Part shown: positions 4,976 to 63,578 of the stretch, piece by piece
Numbering within the stretch: position 1 is the stretch's first letter
Layout: the number at the start of each line of letters is the position of its first letter
Virus record (IMG/VR): IMGVR_UViG_3300034072_000758
Coordinates: 310,001 to 374,000 of that record
Direction: 5' to 3' (one strand)
Length of the DNA: 64,000 nucleotides
Notes under the pieces: generated by a model
Database searches by the model: none
What the model saw: the letters and a program-made list of their open reading frames with translations, nothing else
What the model was told of the DNA's origin: nothing
Position numbers and translations under genes: made by a program

Positions 4976-5629
4976 ATGTATTCTATCAGAGTTCGCACAC
5001 GCAAGCACGAGGCATATTTTACCACGCGCTATGTGTACAAAAAAATCTGCGGTGTATACTACTCGTTTCGCTCAAAGCCAGTCTTTAATAAAACCAAGTT
5101 CGAGATCGTCCGGCTGGAAGAAGCCCAAGAGATCATGAACCGGTATTATACGATGAAGTATCTAAGCCCATATACGACCGGGCGTAGCTTCGATTTTAAA
5201 ACCCCCACGTTCGATACCATAATCGTCACTAATTTCGAACACCAATATCCTGATTTGGACATCTATTGCGGCGACAGAAAAATTCCATACGAACCACAAA
5301 TCGTTCTCAATTTGGTCCTTGAGCGATGGGTGGAAACAGCGATCACCTATGATGGTAACTTTATGCGGTTTCTGAAAGAGTGCGACATAAAACCAAACGA
5401 ACGGTTTTTATGTTTCTCGGTATCGCGTAAAGCTAAACAGTTCGTGGGTAAACCAAACACTTGGGTCACCCCTGCGACAGAAGATGAATTAGCTCTTATT
5501 CGATTGGTAGATCGAAAGCTGACCTTCTTGGATTTCAAGGAAATCATCACAGAAATGAAGCCGGTTCGGCGAGGCAAATACCGAACAGTCACCAAAAAGA
5601 TACTCGGAAATTATACCAAAACAATTTGA
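4976..5629 (+). CDS. Hypothetical protein
   Basis: 217 aa ORF downstream of a TTGACT box. Confidence 0.7.
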   Translation: MYSIRVRTRKHEAYFTTRYVYKKICGVYYSFRSKPVFNKTKFEIVRLEEAQEIMNRYYTMKYLSPYTTGRSFDFKTPTFDTIIVTNFEHQYPDLDIYCGDRKIPYEPQIVLNLVLERWVETAITYDGNFMRFLKECDIKPNERFLCFSVSRKAKQFVGKPNTWVTPATEDELALIRLVDRKLTFLDFKEIITEMKPVRRGKYRTVTKKILGNYTKTI

Positions 5630-22921: not shown

Positions 22922-22962
22922 GCTATTGACATTGGGTATAGAGGTAGCTTATAAATACATCA

Positions 22963-23292
22963 TCACTGTTTGACGACTGTGTAATAGGCTTGGTAAGACG
23001 GGAGTTCGACTCTCCCCGCCTCCACCATTGAATACATTAGTTGCTAGGTAGCCCCTAGTACGGAATATAGGATTGATCATCCTTAGCAGGTTCGAATCCT
23101 GCCCGAATGTGTTCTATTATGGGGGCGTTTTGGTTTCGATTATCGGCTGACGGACAGGAATAGGTGACGGTAAGAAACGACCGACCAATCAGTTCAAATT
23201 CATACTTGCCAACGACAACGTTGACATGAAGGACATGGCGCTCGCCGCCTAATCCATTCGGGGCTTGAGAGAGCCTAGCAACAGAATCTCTC
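22963..23292 (+). ncRNA. ssrA: Circularly permuted two-piece tmRNA (alphaproteobacterial type), tag ANDNVDMKDMALAA
   Basis: Acceptor piece ends GACGGGAGTTCGACTCTCCCCGCCTCCACCA (23027); coding piece starts GGGGGCG (23121) with G3.U70; tag 23208-23252; GGGC..GAGAGA-GCCT-AGCAACAGAA-TCTCTC pseudoknot; TTGACA and TATAAATA promoter at 22926-22957. Confidence 0.93.
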
Positions 23293-23293
23293 G

Positions 23294-23399
23294 TTCTATC
23301 TACAGAGTCCGGCCCCACAAGGGAAAGGCGTACAGACGGTTATATTGTTAGATACAGAACTTCACTTCGGTGCCTTCTGTGTGGCCATGTAACCTAGAA
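23294..23399 (+). ncRNA. Candidate structured RNA co-transcribed after tmRNA
   Basis: Nested stems TTCTA/TAGAA, TACA/TGTA, GGCC/GGCC enclosing ACAGAA/TTCTGT with a C(UUCG)G loop; no ORF; lies upstream of the terminator. Confidence 0.45.
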
Positions 23400-36223: not shown

Positions 36224-37387
36224 TTAGTTGAACTCGGTGGCGTTTTTACGCAGGATGTAGTCTGGGGAGACCCACTTCCCGATTTTCCGGCCACGCAGGA
36301 GCGACCGGCCTTCGGTCACCGTCTTGATAACGATGCCTTCCCGAACGTGGATGCCTGACAGCGTATCCTTGCCGTCGCGCACGGCTTCCAGTGCCGCCAG
36401 ATCGTATTGGCCACGATACAGGACCGGGGCGACCGGAATACCCAGCTTCGCCGCCAGAGCTTCGAAAACCTCATAAGATACGAACTCGTACCCGATTTGG
36501 ATGTCGAAGATGTAGAGCGTGGGCTTCTTGAAGCCGTAGGTCAGGTCTTGGATACCTTCGCCGAAGATTTCACCGAAGACACGCACCGGCTGACCGTACT
36601 CGTCCGAGATAGCCTTGATCAGTTCACCGAAGCCGTTTTCGACCAGCGGCTTGAGCATCCGAACATAGACGTTCTTGAGCGCGTTGGCTTCGTTATCCTT
36701 GAAGACCAGCCCTTGTGCCGCCATACCCTTCGAGCCGACATACAGATTGCCGTCGAAGAACAGTTCGTCGTTATTCAGGCCGGGGACATAACCGATCTGA
36801 ACGTGAGTACCGTGAAGCTTTTCAGTCGCCACGACTTCATCCGACGAATCGAAAGTATCCGGGTAATTCTGAACGCTTTCGAAATCGTACTTGTGGGTAT
36901 TGCCCGAAATATTACAAACATCGCCCGCAAAGTTCGTAGGGACGGGTGGTTCGTACTTGGTGATACCAAGGAACTCGGCCACGTTGTCGCCTTCCAGAAC
37001 GGTCAGAATATGTTCGCCGTTCGGGCTTTCGATCACGTCCGAAACTTCGCCGCATCCCATATCGTATTTCGAAATGGGATACAGGACGCCTTGCGAGAAG
37101 ATGCCACGCAGACGCTTGGCCTTGACACGATCACCCTTCTTACCGGCGAGGAAGCCGACATTCTTTTCATGGTCCCAGAAGTCCATGAAGCGCAGAACAT
37201 CTTCGGGAAGAACGGCGGCTTCGGGAATGTAGGCTACGAGATCGCCCGCCTGATAGCGGTGAGAGCCATCTTCCAGCTTACCAGAAATACACAGAAAGCC
37301 CTTGATTTGGATGATCGACAGACGATCCGCATCCGGGTGATGATCGACAGAGAGAATCTTGGTCACTTCGACCGCAAAACTTGACAT
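36224..37387 (-). CDS. RNA ligase (DRB0094/Rnl5 family) with N-terminal OB domain
   Basis: HPDADRL, RLRGIFSQG, motif I EKLHGT, FGEIFG.GIQ, FDI, motif IV EGIVIK, K.VS..Y. Confidence 0.9.
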   Translation of the reverse strand: MSSFAVEVTKILSVDHHPDADRLSIIQIKGFLCISGKLEDGSHRYQAGDLVAYIPEAAVLPEDVLRFMDFWDHEKNVGFLAGKKGDRVKAKRLRGIFSQGVLYPISKYDMGCGEVSDVIESPNGEHILTVLEGDNVAEFLGITKYEPPVPTNFAGDVCNISGNTHKYDFESVQNYPDTFDSSDEVVATEKLHGTHVQIGYVPGLNNDELFFDGNLYVGSKGMAAQGLVFKDNEANALKNVYVRMLKPLVENGFGELIKAISDEYGQPVRVFGEIFGEGIQDLTYGFKKPTLYIFDIQIGYEFVSYEVFEALAAKLGIPVAPVLYRGQYDLAALEAVRDGKDTLSGIHVREGIVIKTVTEGRSLLRGRKIGKWVSPDYILRKNATEFN

Positions 37388-38629: not shown

Positions 38630-38703
38630 TGGAGCGGGTAGCGAGAATCGAACTCGCACGATCAGCATGGCAAGCTGACAGGCTACCACTACATCATACC
38701 CGC
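38630..38703 (-). tRNA. tRNA-Gly(GCC) with CCA
   Basis: GCGGGTA...TCAGC-TTGCCAT-GCTGA...TACCCGC-T-CCA. Confidence 0.93.
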
Positions 38704-38705
38704 GT

Positions 38706-38799
38706 AGCGGGGAATGCTTCTGTTGCCAAGTGCATCCCCAAAACTCCGGTTAGCGACAATTAAGCCGCCAGAGCCAAGACTACGTTATCGTTGTCAGTT
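38706..38799 (-). ncRNA. tmRNA-like fragment lacking the tRNA-like domain (tag frame DNDNVVLALAA* plus pseudoknot)
   Basis: Tag 38795-38760; GAGT..GGGGATGC-ACTT-GGCAACAGAA-GCATTCCC pseudoknot with the same architecture as in the main tmRNA; TAAATA at 38810-38805. Confidence 0.7.
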
Positions 38800-38842
38800 G
38801 ATTATATTTATCATAGACAAATATCAAACGCAACTAAAAAGT

Positions 38843-39214
38843 CTAATTTCTTTGACCACCATCAAGAATCAGATGAAAGAAAAAATCCTCCAACTCTTCT
38901 TCGGATTTCCAATTACGAATCTTATAACTAACGATGTCCCAATTATCCCAATCTTCGCTGGTTCGGTACAGCTTACCGTAACTTTGCCATTCTCCGCCCT
39001 TATGAGGCCCATAGGTGATGCTGATCACAAAGAACTCGTGGACAGTAAAAGTAAACCGGGTAAGACTGTGAATGTGCTCGTATATAGGTTTCTTGGAAGT
39101 CTTATGGTATCGGGCCATAATACGATATTCTTTATCGTCTACTGACAATAGATACCCATTTGGATACACATTCGTTTCCAATAGAATACCAGCAATGGCC
39201 TTGGTAATAATCAT
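38843..39214 (-). CDS. Hypothetical protein
   Basis: Coupled ORF. Confidence 0.6.
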   Translation of the reverse strand: MIITKAIAGILLETNVYPNGYLLSVDDKEYRIMARYHKTSKKPIYEHIHSLTRFTFTVHEFFVISITYGPHKGGEWQSYGKLYRTSEDWDNWDIVSYKIRNWKSEEELEDFFFHLILDGGQRN

Positions 39215-41586: not shown

Positions 41587-41587
41587 G

Positions 41588-41662
41588 TGGACTATGATGG
41601 AATCGAACCATCGCTATCGTTGAGTTACAACGACGACCTATCCTTTACAGGTCTGATAGCCC
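41588..41662 (-). tRNA. Atypical tRNA-like RNA: Ala-type acceptor (G3.U70, A73) with nominal AAC anticodon
   Basis: GGGCTAT/ATAGTCC-A; 5-bp D stem GACCT/AGGTC; TCGTT-GTAACTC-AACGA; canonical T arm. Confidence 0.7.
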
Positions 41663-42312: not shown

Positions 42313-42313
42313 G

Positions 42314-42385
42314 TACTCGGTAATGGAATCGAACCATTATCTTCGGAGCCACAATCCGACGCTCTTACCGTTGAGCTAACCAAGC
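42314..42385 (-). tRNA. tRNA-His(GTG), alphaproteobacterial type without G-1 (G1.U72, A73)
   Basis: U at -1; GCTTGGT/ACCGAGT-A; TCGGA-TTGTGGC-TCCGA. Confidence 0.9.
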
Positions 42386-42404
42386 ATAGTTATAAGATTC
42401 ACAA

Positions 42405-42416
42405 TGTAAAAGAACA
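42405..42416 (-). promoter_or_regulatory. boxA-like antitermination element
   Basis: TGTTCTTTTACA versus rrn boxA TGCTCTTTAACA, preceded by a hairpin (42415-42466). Confidence 0.5.
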
Positions 42417-42467
42417 TGTCTCATACACGATACAAGAAGAGGCTTCTTGCTTCATTAATGAGACATT

Positions 42468-42544
42468 TGGGGTGACCAACGGGATTCGAACCCGCGCTTG
42501 GAGATTCACAGTCTCTCGTGCTAACCGCTAACACTATGGCCACC
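42468..42544 (-). tRNA. tRNA-His(GTG), canonical G-1:C73 type with CCA
   Basis: G-GTGGCCA/TGGTCAC-C-CCA; anticodon loop CTGTGAA. Confidence 0.92.
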
Positions 42545-42554
42545 ATAAAGATCG

Positions 42555-43167
42555 CTACAGAGCTAACATCAGTCGATCAACTCCAATCGCCCAACCAATA
42601 CCTTCTGAGTATCGGCCACCACCGGCAATCTGTTTTTGTGCTCCAAGTTTGGAACACTCTGCTTCGAAACCTTCTTCAACATAATAGGTCAAACCGCGCT
42701 TAACCGAGTCCGTGAATGAGTATTCGACGCCAAGCTTGTCTAAACACAACTTCAAAAGCCTCTTGGCCTCTTCTGTCGAATTGTCAACTTCACCGAGGAT
42801 TTCCACACCAAATTGGGTGAACTCTCGATAACGACCAGCTTGAGGTCGTTCGTAGCGATAGCACCGGGAGACGTAGAAAATCCTCTTGGACTTACTTGTC
42901 TTTGACCAGTTATCCCGCCAAAGTTCTTGGACTAAGCCGGTGACTTCGGGGATCAAACATACCGGACGGTTTGCCTTATCCTCGAAAGCCCACATTTGAT
43001 TGATGATCTCAGACCCCGCCTTGTCGATGAACGTTTGTTGTTCCCACAAGGCTGGAAGAATCACTTCCTCAAATCCAGCTTCAATGAAGAGACCCCCTAA
43101 GAGCCTCGATTACACGGACGTAGGACTTAGCTTCGTCCCCTTCCAAAATTCTCGTACCTCGTAACAT
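42555..43167 (-). CDS. hisS: Minimal catalytic-domain-only histidyl-tRNA synthetase (about 203 aa); needs a +1 shift near 43093-43101
   Basis: MLRGTR..; GFEEVILP (motif 1), LIPEVT, YRYERPQAGRYREFTQFGVE (motif 2), RGLTYY, GGGRY, GWAIGVDRL (motif 3); no insertion or anticodon-binding domain; frame break at CTT AGG GGG T. Confidence 0.85.
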
Positions 43168-61598: not shown

Positions 61599-61613
61599 GG
61601 CATAAATATACTA

Positions 61614-63578
61614 ATGAACAAGAACAAAGTAAACATTCCATCCAAAGTCCTTTCGGGGAAATTGCTTACTTCCGTTGGTAAAGACCTTTGGAATTTTAAT
61701 GACGGTGATGAGTATTGGAGCGGGGGTTCGCAACCTCGCTTCTATACGTGGAATGTTACTTTGTCGGTTTCTTCTCAGAGACATTCATCGTCTCAAACTC
61801 GCAAGCCATATTTTTATGATGGTTTGGATATAAACACAAATATGTGGATTGCTGAACAGTCAACCGGTATTGCGCTTAAAATAACCTCCATAACATCTAA
61901 GACTGAGACCACAATTGATTGTGTGGTAGAAGATTATCTGCGTTATAATACATTGCGATTCTCTGGCGGAACAGGAAATGGTATCTTCGGCGAAGATACT
62001 CCGATTGTTATATTTCAATTAAATGAAGATAATCTTCCTTTGATTGATCCGGTTCCTACTACTACTTCGAGTAGTTTCTATCCAAATTTGATGTCTCGTT
62101 TTTCGTTCACCGCGAAAAATTATTATTTTGAACTGTACAAAATCAATCATGATTTCAAAATTGGTGATCTTATTTCTGCTGATCCAGCCGGGTCGTCTTT
62201 TCAAAAAACCAGCCCCGATTATCCGCATATTATCGGAGAGGTGACTTACACCTCCAACGGATCGAGTGTTTTTTTGGTCGATCCGTTTCAACAGATCAAT
62301 GAAGATTTCGATTCGTTAATTGGTGATGTGGGCCAAGTCATTTATGCTAATGCTTCGGACGCTGGTGGAATGTCCCTTATGGGTAACCTTCCGGTCATGA
62401 TTAAGCTTAGAAATAACACTAATTCTTTCGTGATTGGAAGTGGTTCCTCAACTGATGCCGGTGGTATCGTTAAACTAAATGGTATTTCGACTTCGGTTGG
62501 TGATGGTTCGGCATCCGATTTTGTTTCGTATGTCAATGCTAATACGAATTTACATGGATGTGTGGCTTCTCTTCTCGCATCCCCTACAGTTATTTCCTCT
62601 GATCCTTCGCAGTTGGGATATGGTGAACCAGCTTTTTACATCACGGGTGGGAATTATCCGGTCGCATCTATCAATGGTGTAAATGTTACATTTACTACCA
62701 CAACTGTTGGCGAAGCGTCATACGGGGATACTTATGCGCTGGAAGAAGATTTGGCGACCGACATCAATGCCGCTAATATTCCGTTTATTGTGGCTTCCAC
62801 GGAAATGAATAAATTGAAAATCAGTAATACTGATGGTGGTCCAATTGATATTGTAAACATCACTCCCGATTCTAGTGGCTACCATTTTGCTGGTACAGCT
62901 TCGGCATCTGGTCTTCCGCTTTCTACCCCAGCGAATACAAGTAGCGGGATGATTCGCTTGGATGCGGTCGATGCTCGCGCTATCAACGTGTATGACGAAA
63001 TTGGTACAGCAGTAGATGATTTCGGATTGTATAGTTCTGAAAACGGTATCAAAGCTGCTGGTATTGTTATCGAGCAAGGTCTTCGCACTTCATCTAGCTA
63101 TGTTGTGACGAACATTCCGGCCCGCGATTCTTTGAATGCGGTTTTTGGTGACATATGTTTCGTAACAGATAAAGGTAACTCGGAGTGGGGCTACTATATC
63201 TATACTCTTGCGTCAGAGTGGGTGAAATTCGCAGATAAGGATTCCGCCGCAACAGATGCGCAATCTCTCGAAATCGAGATCGACGCTGAGAGTGATTTAG
63301 AGGGTCTGATCGCCGTGGTTTCAAACGGAAGCGGTATCAATATGGTCACGGTCAAAGTAATAGAAGCTTTTGACGCACCAGCAACCGTATCGGTAGGAGA
63401 CGACATAAACAACGTGAGATTAATGGATGTATCTCTCAATGATCTGACCGTTATTTCTGAATATTCATACACGCCATCATATCATTATACAACTGGTGGT
63501 GACACCAATATCAACTATTACTTGAACTTAAATGGTGCGACTACTGGTCGCGCAAAAATATCGATTTCTTACTCATAA
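61614..63578 (+). CDS. Virion structural protein
   Basis: C-terminal domain paralogous to 19362..20435; TAAATA-N5-ATG. Confidence 0.75.
   Translation: MNKNKVNIPSKVLSGKLLTSVGKDLWNFNDGDEYWSGGSQPRFYTWNVTLSVSSQRHSSSQTRKPYFYDGLDINTNMWIAEQSTGIALKITSITSKTETTIDCVVEDYLRYNTLRFSGGTGNGIFGEDTPIVIFQLNEDNLPLIDPVPTTTSSSFYPNLMSRFSFTAKNYYFELYKINHDFKIGDLISADPAGSSFQKTSPDYPHIIGEVTYTSNGSSVFLVDPFQQINEDFDSLIGDVGQVIYANASDAGGMSLMGNLPVMIKLRNNTNSFVIGSGSSTDAGGIVKLNGISTSVGDGSASDFVSYVNANTNLHGCVASLLASPTVISSDPSQLGYGEPAFYITGGNYPVASINGVNVTFTTTTVGEASYGDTYALEEDLATDINAANIPFIVASTEMNKLKISNTDGGPIDIVNITPDSSGYHFAGTASASGLPLSTPANTSSGMIRLDAVDARAINVYDEIGTAVDDFGLYSSENGIKAAGIVIEQGLRTSSSYVVTNIPARDSLNAVFGDICFVTDKGNSEWGYYIYTLASEWVKFADKDSAATDAQSLEIEIDAESDLEGLIAVVSNGSGINMVTVKVIEAFDAPATVSVGDDINNVRLMDVSLNDLTVISEYSYTPSYHYTTGGDTNINYYLNLNGATTGRAKISISYS

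What the first reader, a model, noticed from the sequence alone, without database searches (positions are those of the whole stretch)
38706..38810. Stand-alone tag-only mini-tmRNA upstream of tRNA-Gly
Seen: a late promoter TAAATA ends 9 nt before a frame GAC AAC GAU AAC GUA GUC UUG GCU CUG GCG GCU UAA (DNDNVVLALAA*). It is followed by the same (G/A)GCAACAGAA pseudoknot as the full tmRNA, with different but paired stems. There is no start codon and no tRNA-like domain. RNase P cleavage at tRNA-Gly would release an RNA of about 95 nt. Inference: compensated pairing and a dedicated promoter argue against a remnant. It might be a decoy for SmpB, S1 or a tmRNA-cleaving toxin, or an mRNA-like domain acting in trans (speculatively with the Ala-acceptor RNA at 41588).
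Basis: partly seen in the sequence, partly recalled or inferred. Interest (0 to 1): 0.75.

Follow-up and report, generated by a model that had tools for sequence, protein, structure and literature searches.

The report
Tag-only tmRNA fragment before tRNA-Gly
A 517-kb phage that already has a complete ribosome-rescue RNA (tmRNA) and its partner protein SmpB also carries, behind one of its own late promoters and directly in front of a glycine tRNA gene, a second copy of only the tag-coding half of such an RNA; this copy cannot rescue ribosomes by itself, and whether it is a leftover or a small regulatory RNA is still open.

Summary
On the minus strand at 38811-38704 lie an ATAAATA promoter element, a 12-codon frame DNDNVVLALAA* with no start codon, a hairpin with the stop codon in its loop, and an intact pseudoknot with the GGCAACAGAA loop. 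tRNA-Gly(GCC) begins 5-6 nt after the pseudoknot. There is no tRNA-like domain. Rfam's alpha_tmRNA model matches only the tag and pseudoknot (39.3 bits, cut-off 50).

ATAAATA is this phage's late, leaderless-gene promoter: 39 of 115 copies have ATG exactly 5 nt downstream, and several drive virion genes. The RNA should therefore start 4 nt before the tag and be 96 nt long after RNase P cleavage.

The element is not a copy of the resident tmRNA (about 65% identical, no closer than unrelated tmRNAs), so "compensated stems" only reflect descent from another tmRNA lineage. Its closest full-length relative found is the Nitratireductor arenosus ssrA, which also resumes with GAC.

One unrelated T4-like phage contig (L154) has the same layout without a tRNA; its relatives lack it. 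I found no orthologues, RNA data, integrase, or pairing partner.

Best reading: a 5'-truncated ssrA module transcribed as the tRNA-Gly leader. A decoy role remains possible.

The parts
38805..38811 (-). ATAAATA promoter element, matching the T4 late promoter type (7 of 8 positions of TATAAATA). The string ATAAATATAATC is identical to the promoter of a leaderless gene at genome position 94534.
   Evidence: Of 115 ATAAATA copies in the genome, 67 fall in the 9.4% of the genome called intergenic. Thirty-nine have ATG exactly 5 nt downstream, against 1-4 for control heptamers, and 37 of those 39 open ORFs of at least 65 codons. Five of the ten longest such ORFs match virion structural or tail-fibre PHROGs.
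38799..38799 (-). Predicted transcription start (A), the 6th nt after ATAAATA and 4 nt before the first tag codon.
   Evidence: Inferred from the ATAAATA-N5-ATG geometry of leaderless genes. It has not been measured.
38760..38795 (-). Tag reading frame GAC AAC GAT AAC GTA GTC TTG GCT CTG GCG GCT TAA, encoding DNDNVVLALAA*. There is no start codon.
   Evidence: GAC as the first codon also occurs in the full ssrA of Nitratireductor arenosus.
38742..38775 (-). Predicted hairpin that places the TAA stop codon in its loop. It competes with pseudoknot stem S1.
   Evidence: Minimum-free-energy fold of the 96-nt RNA: -32.7 kcal/mol, z = -2.8 against dinucleotide shuffles.
38710..38747 (-). H-type pseudoknot. 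S1 is GGAGT/ACTT (four pairs), S2 is GGGGATGC/GCATTCCC, and the loop is GGCAACAGAA.
   Evidence: The S2 duplex is 8 pairs at -15.1 kcal/mol, against -12.3 +/- 2.7 for 147 distinct tmRNAs.
38704..38709 (-). Six-nt linker CGCTAC between the pseudoknot and the tRNA 5' end. The expected RNase P cut lies after 38704.
   Evidence: Read from the sequence. The cleavage itself is inferred.
38630..38703 (-). tRNA-Gly(GCC) with an encoded CCA end; the only Gly-GCC tRNA in the genome.
   Evidence: ARAGORN; Rfam tRNA model 58.6 bits.
22922..23295 (+). The phage's complete two-piece (permuted) tmRNA with tag ANDNVDMKDMALAA, listed for comparison. It is not the source of the element.
   Evidence: RF01849 72.3 bits and RF04321 97.5 bits. 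It is about 65% identical to the element over the tag and pseudoknot.

Best explanation
The element is a 5'-truncated copy of the coding piece of an alphaproteobacterial-type two-piece ssrA. It keeps only the mRNA-like module: the tag frame, the stop-codon hairpin and the terminal pseudoknot, running to the natural 3' end of the gene.

It lies directly behind a phage late-type promoter (ATAAATA) and directly in front of tRNA-Gly(GCC). It is therefore most likely transcribed late as the 96-nt 5' leader of the pre-tRNA and released by RNase P. This is the same way some full-length phage tmRNA coding pieces get their 3' end from a following tRNA.

It has no acceptor stem, T-arm or P2 strand, so it cannot be charged or enter the ribosome, and it does not tag proteins. 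I commit to the reading that it is a leftover of a second, foreign-lineage tmRNA gene, kept because it supplies the promoter and spacer for the tRNA, with no role of its own in ribosome rescue. The 5' boundary at the promoter motif could have arisen by recombination at that short motif.

Shown: the anatomy, the homology, the validity of the promoter motif, and the lack of a tRNA-like domain or pairing partner. Inferred: transcription, the start site, RNase P release, and the absence of a function.
For: Homology covers only the tag and pseudoknot, with 187 model positions missing. The complete genome has only two tmRNA-like loci. The promoter motif is validated genome-wide. The tRNA starts 5-6 nt after the pseudoknot. 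Full coding pieces followed at once by a tRNA occur in other phage contigs (L185, L141). The element is no closer to the resident tmRNA than to unrelated ones, so a foreign origin is likely. No orthologue was found in the sampled IMG/VR contigs, GenBank phages, 185,579 species genomes or JGI metagenomes. The only similar element (L154) is absent from that phage's relatives, so the distribution is sporadic. There is no excess complementarity to any acceptor RNA. Partial tmRNA genes are a known by-product of gene traffic (PMC4131195).
Against: Nothing in the module is damaged. The frame is open, it ends in LALAA, the stop codon sits in a hairpin loop, S2 is stronger than average, and the 10-nt loop matches the consensus. 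Yet no near-identical source exists in any collection searched; the best full-length relatives are 77-87% identical with indels. A second, unrelated phage has the same promoter-to-tag geometry without a tRNA behind it. None of 142 ordinary alpha-type tmRNAs has ATAAATA before the tag, so the promoter was juxtaposed, not inherited. The leader is 96 nt, whereas other ATAAATA-driven tRNAs in this genome have leaders of 4-33 nt.
Confidence: 0.5

Rival explanations
1. It is a working stand-alone small RNA: a late-expressed mimic of the tmRNA mRNA-like domain and pseudoknot. It would titrate whatever binds that part of host or phage tmRNA, such as ribosomal protein S1, RNase R, an unknown reader of the GGCAACAGAA loop, or SmpB's contact upstream of the resume codon. 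This would tune trans-translation late in infection. It would be the mirror image of the TLD-only RNA of mycobacteriophage DS6A, which inhibits tmRNA.
For: Every module is intact despite 13-23% divergence from all sampled full-length relatives. The promoter is of the validated late type, and the predicted start lies 4 nt before the tag. An independent element in an unrelated T4-like contig (L154) has a perfect TATAAATA 8 nt before its GCA resume codon, compensatory differences in S2 and no tRNA behind it. The phage invests in trans-translation with its own tmRNA and SmpB. There is a precedent for a one-domain phage tmRNA that inhibits tmRNA (PMC4131195, PMC11915505).
Against: Only two examples were found among roughly 190 tag-plus-pseudoknot loci with enough upstream sequence, and neither is conserved in relatives. 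No RNA run was listed. No binding partner is known for this part of alpha-type tmRNA. Intactness can also mean recent capture from an unsampled lineage.
Confidence: 0.33
2. It is an attP-like or integration-derived 3' fragment of ssrA. Integrative elements that target ssrA carry the 3' end of the gene to restore it after integration, and in a permuted ssrA that 3' end is exactly the tag plus the pseudoknot.
For: The fragment runs to the natural 3' end of the alpha-type gene, Rfam model position 355. ssrA fragments made by island integration are documented (PMC4131195, PMC4383910). Other viral contigs carry coding pieces without an acceptor piece (L027, L046, L185).
Against: The complete 516.8-kb genome has direct terminal repeats and no tyrosine integrase, and the L154 record has none either. 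No sampled bacterial genome carries this tag. The other fragments begin at the 5' end of the coding piece, not at the tag. Serine recombinases were not searched.
Confidence: 0.06
3. It is an mRNA-like domain that works in trans with a separately encoded alanine-accepting RNA, either the G3:U70 tRNA-like gene at 41587-41662 or the acceptor piece of the full tmRNA, forming an alternative split tmRNA with a second tag.
For: The RNA at 41587-41662 does have G3:U70 and is an aberrant tRNA, scoring 17 bits against Rfam tRNA. Some phage contigs separate the tRNA-like domain from the tag module (L152 and L139).
Against: The element has no strand that could form P1 or P2. Best duplex energies with either candidate lie inside the shuffle distribution: 58% and 18% of shuffles do as well or better. 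No known mechanism loads an untethered template into a rescued ribosome.
Confidence: 0.04
4. It is a chance resemblance in an AT-rich tRNA leader.
For: None beyond the sub-threshold Rfam score.
Against: The E-value is 1.8e-10 for the whole genome. Tag frame, stop hairpin and pseudoknot occur together in the right order. The element shares 87% identity in aligned columns with the N. arenosus ssrA.
Confidence: 0.01

Closest known systems
Coding piece of two-piece (permuted) alphaproteobacterial tmRNA (Rfam RF01849 / RF04321); nearest full-length relative found is the ssrA of Nitratireductor arenosus CAU 1489 (L258/L309)
   Same: It has an xNDN...LAA* tag frame with the stop codon in a hairpin loop. 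It has a terminal H-type pseudoknot with CGGAGTT, ACTTGGCAACAGAA and the matching S2 strand. It ends at the same 3' position. It shares the GAC resume codon with N. arenosus.
   Different: It lacks the 5' acceptor strand, the D-loop analogue, the P2 strand and everything else upstream of about -4. No acceptor piece is encoded with it. It scores below both Rfam cut-offs.
TLD-only tmRNA of mycobacteriophage DS6A (PMC4131195, PMC11915505)
   Same: It is a phage-borne gene holding only one of the two functional halves of tmRNA. It shows that half-tmRNAs can be retained and can interfere with trans-translation.
   Different: DS6A keeps the opposite half, the tRNA-like domain, which binds SmpB. The element here has nothing known to bind SmpB's main site.
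ssrA 3' fragments at the ends of genomic islands and prophages (PMC4131195, PMC4383910)
   Same: It is a 3'-terminal piece of ssrA without the 5' part, sitting in mobile DNA.
   Different: There is no tyrosine integrase in the complete genome. The phage looks lytic: a jumbo genome with terminal repeats. The element has its own promoter, and its 5' edge is at the tag rather than at the start of the coding piece.
Element in IMG/VR contig IMGVR_UViG_3300033068_000236 (L154/L302, about 4040-4185 of L302)
   Same: A T4-type late promoter motif is followed 8-9 nt later by the resume codon. It has a tag (ANDNVSMNYKLAA), CGGAGTTTTGG, CTTGGCAACAGAA and a paired S2. There is no tRNA-like domain within 450 nt, and Rfam gives only a partial match (34.7 bits).
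   Different: The phage is unrelated (35% G+C, T4-like neighbouring genes). The spacer between stop codon and pseudoknot is longer. It uses a GCA resume codon. No tRNA lies downstream. It comes from a 12%-complete contig, so a full tmRNA elsewhere in that phage cannot be excluded.
Small stable RNAs of the phage T4 tRNA cluster (species 1 and 2; recalled from my own knowledge, not tested here)
   Same: They are small structured RNAs co-transcribed with phage tRNAs and released by tRNA processing enzymes.
   Different: They have no sequence relation to tmRNA, and their function is also unknown.

Membership tests
tmRNA (ssrA), two-piece alpha type | tRNA-like domain: acceptor stem with G3:U70, T-arm and a CCA end, formed by the acceptor piece and the 5' end of the coding piece | tested here: not met
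   The Rfam alignment skips 187 model positions. Upstream of the promoter lies the end of a 123-codon ORF favoured by codon usage. ARAGORN finds no tmRNA.
tmRNA (ssrA), two-piece alpha type | Score at or above the Rfam gathering threshold | tested here: not met
   RF01849 gives 39.3 bits against a cut-off of 50, and RF04321 gives 23.0 against 47.
tmRNA (ssrA), two-piece alpha type | Tag reading frame without a start codon, ending in a hydrophobic ...LAA degron followed by a stop | tested here: met
   The frame reads DNDNVVLALAA*. ALAA ends 67 of 94 distinct tags in the comparison set.
tmRNA (ssrA), two-piece alpha type | Terminal pseudoknot with the conserved GCAACAGAA loop | tested here: met
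tmRNA (ssrA), two-piece alpha type | SmpB partner present | tested here: met
   SmpB is at G000:C1:22414-22839, scoring 172 bits. It lies 310 kb away and equally serves the full tmRNA.
Integration-derived ssrA 3' fragment (att site) | Integrase in the element, usually adjacent | tested here: not met
   PF00589 has no match in the complete genome. Serine recombinases were not searched.
Integration-derived ssrA 3' fragment (att site) | The fragment reaches the 3' end of the target gene | tested here: met
   The alignment reaches model position 355 of 355.
Integration-derived ssrA 3' fragment (att site) | A block of identity with the host's ssrA | tested here: inconclusive
   The host is unknown. 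No genome among 185,579 species and no JGI metagenome contig encodes this tag.
Pre-tRNA 5' leader | It lies between a promoter and the mature 5' end of a tRNA on the same strand | tested here: met
   It is unusually long at 96 nt, against 4, 19 and 33 nt for the other ATAAATA-driven tRNAs.
T4-type late promoter | TATAAATA-like box about 6 nt before the transcription start, driving virion genes | tested here: met
   The motif and its fixed spacing to ATG are strongly enriched, and the downstream genes include virion and tail-fibre proteins. Timing and the sigma factor were not tested.
TLD-only phage tmRNA (DS6A type) | Retains the tRNA-like domain and lacks the tag | tested here: not met
   The situation here is the opposite.

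The most novel reading that the evidence does not exclude
Large phages may make a late, tag-only mimic of tmRNA (resume region, tag frame and pseudoknot, without the tRNA-like domain) as a deliberate product. It would be encoded either as a stand-alone mini-gene (this window and L154) or from an internal late promoter inside full-length phage tmRNA genes. Many T4-like phage tmRNAs, such as the Melnitz-like ones, carry ATAAATA 8-10 nt before the resume codon, the same geometry as here. The RNA would modulate host or phage trans-translation late in infection, complementing the known TLD-only inhibitor of phage DS6A.
Probability: 0.2. Interest if true: 0.8.

Novelty: new variant of a known kind. 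Interest (0 to 1): 0.5.

Why it matters
Phage-encoded tmRNA and SmpB are common in huge phages, but what they are for is unknown. A half-molecule holding only the template and pseudoknot, placed behind a late promoter, would be the counterpart of the one known half-tmRNA (the TLD-only RNA of DS6A) that blocks trans-translation. If it is functional, it gives a handle on two open points: what the conserved pseudoknot loop of alpha-type tmRNAs binds, and how phages tune ribosome rescue over the infection cycle. If it is a relic, it is still a clean example of how a phage promoter motif and a tRNA gene can keep a piece of a dead RNA gene alive. It is also a warning for annotation: this element scores below the Rfam cut-off, and ARAGORN missed even the full tmRNA here.

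Tried and rejected
Orthologue hunts that found nothing useful:
- Megablast and blastn against GenBank phages.
- Relatives of the flanking 123-aa gene: none, and it is an ORFan among 5.8 billion proteins.
- Relatives of the RNA ligase: one at 48% identity with no tRNA or tmRNA nearby.
- Relatives of the NUDIX gene at 46-48% identity with no synteny.
- Relatives of the 81-aa gene in unrelated contexts.
- Peptide-level tag pattern in species genomes and JGI metagenomes: zero hits.
- A promoter-plus-tag-plus-pseudoknot pattern in metagenomes found only full tmRNAs and chance hits. My gap range excluded L154-like spacing, so this scan was narrower than intended.

Reads: no RNA run was listed. Contigs of four DNA runs do not cover 38704-38842; one run filed twice holds fragments of a close relative elsewhere in the stretch. 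This says nothing about presence or absence of the element.

Rejected ideas:
- Recent duplication of the resident tmRNA.
- GAC resume codon as a sign of decay: a full ssrA uses it, and 6 of 94 distinct tags start with a residue other than Ala.
- A bulge in S2: the helix is continuous with one G.U pair.
- A sigma-70 promoter: the scan lists none at this site.
- ATAAATA inherited from the ancestral tmRNA: 0 of 142.
- The plus-strand ORF 38714-39145 as a real gene.
- Pairing with an acceptor RNA.

Other alpha-infecting giant phages (Bambus, CcrPW) have ordinary full tmRNAs, and three uncultured huge phages have none. Protein structure and complex prediction were not used because no protein is involved.

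Full report
**Where the window lies.** The window is bases 310001-374000 of a 516,805-bp IMG/VR virus record with direct terminal repeats, 45% G+C and 57 tRNA genes. The genome carries a complete two-piece (permuted) alpha-type tmRNA at window 22922-23295 (+), scoring 72.3 bits with RF01849 and 97.5 bits with RF04321. It also carries its own SmpB outside the window, at genome 22414-22839 (172 bits). The nearest cultured relatives of a neighbouring RNA ligase are giant Brevundimonas and Caulobacter phages at 40% identity or less. The host is therefore probably an alphaproteobacterium, but this is only an inference.

**The observation.**
- ATAAATA lies at 38811-38805.
- The frame GAC AAC GAT AAC GTA GTC TTG GCT CTG GCG GCT TAA lies at 38795-38760.
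- The frame has no in-frame start: the upstream codons are ACT, TCA, then TAA.
- A predicted hairpin (38775-38742) puts the stop codon in its loop.
- The pseudoknot has S1 GGAGT/ACTT, S2 GGGGATGC/GCATTCCC and the loop GGCAACAGAA.
- Six nt (CGCTAC) follow the S2 strand as listed, five (GCTAC) if the fourth C of the CCCC run is counted with the stem, and then tRNA-Gly(GCC) at 38703-38630.

Rfam's alpha_tmRNA model aligns the tag and pseudoknot and skips 187 positions, which cover the whole tRNA-like part and P2. The score is 39.3 bits, with E 7e-10 for the 501-nt stretch searched and 1.8e-10 genome-wide, below the 50-bit cut-off. These are the only two tmRNA-like loci in the genome. The stretch is intergenic in the minus-strand transcription direction. 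The minus-strand 123-codon ORF ending at 38843 fits the genome's codon usage better than the overlapping plus-strand ORF.

**The promoter.** The sigma-70 scan lists nothing at this site, but ATAAATA is clearly a promoter element of this phage.
- Of 115 copies, 67 lie in the 9.4% of the genome that I called intergenic.
- Thirty-nine have ATG exactly 5 nt downstream, against 1-4 for five control heptamers.
- Thirty-seven of those 39 open ORFs of at least 65 codons.
- Five of the ten longest match virion structural or tail-fibre families, and none matches an early function.

So this is a late-type promoter of the T4 TATAAATA kind that often gives leaderless mRNAs, with the start at the 6th nt after the motif. 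Applied here, the start is A38799, 4 nt before GAC. The string ATAAATATAATC is identical to that of a leaderless gene at genome 94534. The RNA released by RNase P at the tRNA would be 96 nt. Its predicted fold is more stable than shuffles (z = -2.8). Three other tRNAs in the genome have the same promoter, but with leaders of only 4, 19 and 33 nt.

**Origin.** Over the tag and pseudoknot, the element is about 65% identical to the resident tmRNA. This is average for unrelated alpha-type tmRNAs (mean 65 +/- 2.6%), with ranks of 50 of 121 and 109 of 157 in two comparisons. It is therefore not a recent internal duplicate. Better matches are rhizobial-type tmRNAs with the same CGGAGTT...ACTTGGCAACAGAA pseudoknot (L085, L018, L239 and others).

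The one full-length ssrA found that also resumes with GAC AAC GAT AAC GT is that of Nitratireductor arenosus CAU 1489, at 87% identity in aligned columns with indels. This has two consequences. First, the Asp resume codon is a lineage trait, not damage; 6 of 94 distinct tags in my set start with a residue other than Ala.

No sampled genome (185,579 species) or JGI metagenome contig encodes the tag NDNVVLALAA*. The source lineage is unsampled.

**State of preservation.** Nothing is broken. S2 is a continuous 8-pair helix with one G.U pair, at -15.1 kcal/mol against -12.3 +/- 2.7 for 147 distinct tmRNAs. The 10-nt loop matches the consensus. The frame is open and ends in LALAA. The stop codon sits in a hairpin loop.

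**A second example.** A scan for ATAAATA followed by a tag returned mostly full phage tmRNAs. One contig, L154 (20.9 kb, 35% G+C, with NAMPT and other T4-like auxiliary genes), has a gene's stop codon and then a perfect TATAAATA. Eight nt further on comes GCA AAC GAT AAT ... TAA, encoding ANDNVSMNYKLAA. CGGAGTTTTGG, CTTGGCAACAGAA and a paired S2 (GGAAGTTT/AAACTTCC) follow.
- The 450 nt upstream are coding sequence.
- No tRNA follows.
- Rfam gives only a partial match of 34.7 bits in the whole record.
- The contig shares almost nothing with this genome.
- Its nearest relatives, at 52% identity in the flanking gene, lack the element.

About 190 tag-plus-pseudoknot loci had at least 400 nt of upstream sequence. 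Only these two lack both halves of the tRNA-like domain.

None of 142 ordinary alpha-type tmRNAs has ATAAATA in the 30 nt before the tag, so the promoter here was not simply inherited. Many full tmRNAs of T4-like phages do carry it 8-10 nt before the resume codon. This is either AT-richness or an internal late promoter; I could not tell which.

**Other ideas tested.**
- Integration relic: the fragment does run to the natural 3' end of the gene, and coding pieces without acceptor pieces occur in viral contigs (L027, L046, L185). However, the complete genome has no tyrosine integrase.
- Trans-acting template: the RNA at 41587-41662 has G3:U70 and is an aberrant tRNA scoring 17 bits. The element's best duplex with it or with the tmRNA acceptor piece is no better than shuffles, and it has no P1 or P2 strand.
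- Expression: no RNA run was listed. DNA contigs from other runs do not cover the element.

**Comparison with what is known.** Partial tmRNA genes are documented as pseudogenes missing one end, as fragments left by island integration, and as the TLD-only gene of mycobacteriophage DS6A, which inhibits tmRNA (PMC4131195, PMC11915505). Huge phages are known to carry tmRNA and SmpB (PMC7162821), and marine T4-like phages carry two-piece tmRNAs (PMC9004378). In these papers and in two literature searches I found no description of a promoter-driven tag-only module.

**Verdict.** The anatomy is secure. The element is not a tmRNA by membership, because it has no tRNA-like domain and scores below threshold, and it cannot work like one.

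The most economical reading, with a probability of about 0.5, is a truncated foreign-lineage ssrA module that now serves as promoter and leader for tRNA-Gly(GCC). Its 5' edge may have been set by recombination at the short promoter motif.

The main rival, at about 0.33, is a late-expressed decoy of the template and pseudoknot part. Its full preservation, the long leader and the independent L154 case keep that reading alive.

Orthologues or transcript data would decide between them.

Noticed in passing
window 41587-41662 (-): ARAGORN calls this tRNA-Val(AAC), but it has a G3:U70 pair (the alanine identity element), an odd D region and only 17 bits against Rfam tRNA. It sits between two tRNA-Ser genes. 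It could be a mis-charging tRNA or a non-decoding tRNA-like RNA.
   Followed up: partly
window about 23026-23110 (+), inside the full tmRNA gene: The segment between the acceptor piece and the coding piece of the full tmRNA is about 90 nt longer than the Rfam consensus. It holds a degenerate tRNA-like fold with a good T-arm, which ARAGORN calls only at relaxed thresholds. It might recruit tRNA-processing enzymes to separate the two pieces. ARAGORN at default settings missed this tmRNA altogether.
   Followed up: partly
whole genome G000 (e.g. genome 94534, 56292, 57562; in the window 61602-61616, where ATAAATA-N5-ATG starts the 654-codon ORF at 61614-63578): Thirty-nine genes start with ATG exactly 5 nt after ATAAATA. 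These look like leaderless late mRNAs, and several encode virion and tail-fibre proteins.
   Followed up: yes
G000:C1:22414-22839 (outside the window): The phage encodes its own SmpB (172 bits), so it carries a complete trans-translation pair.
   Followed up: partly
G000:C1:117291-117364 (outside the window): ARAGORN reports a tRNA with a CUA anticodon (labelled Pyl), meaning a possible amber suppressor. I did not check whether TAG is recoded in any genes.
   Followed up: no
window 42555-43064 (-) with tRNA-His at 42468-42543 and 42313-42385: A 169-aa ORF matches only the N-terminal part of the histidyl-tRNA synthetase core. It lies directly upstream of two tRNA-His genes.
   Followed up: no
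window about 42386-42420 (-); also genome about 479407 and 424780: The motif TTCTTTTACATTGTGAATC (or TTGACATTGTGAAT) recurs just upstream of tRNA-His, tRNA-Arg and tRNA-Met. It is probably a second promoter type for the tRNA clusters.
   Followed up: no
L152 (reverse strand, about 5100-5490) and L139: These viral contigs hold an unpermuted, hairpin-closed tRNA-like domain: the 5' acceptor strand, T-arm and CCA end are contiguous. About 110 nt later comes a tag plus pseudoknot. This arrangement is neither the standard nor the permuted tmRNA form.
   Followed up: no
L027, L046, L185, L165: These viral contigs carry a tmRNA coding piece with coding sequence where the acceptor piece should be. In L185 a tRNA follows the pseudoknot directly. 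Split or partial tmRNA genes appear to be recurrent in phage DNA.
   Followed up: partly
window 36224-37387 (-): An RNA ligase (PF09414 with a PHA02142 OB-fold domain) lies 1.3 kb downstream on the same strand as the tRNA cluster. This would fit tRNA repair.
   Followed up: no
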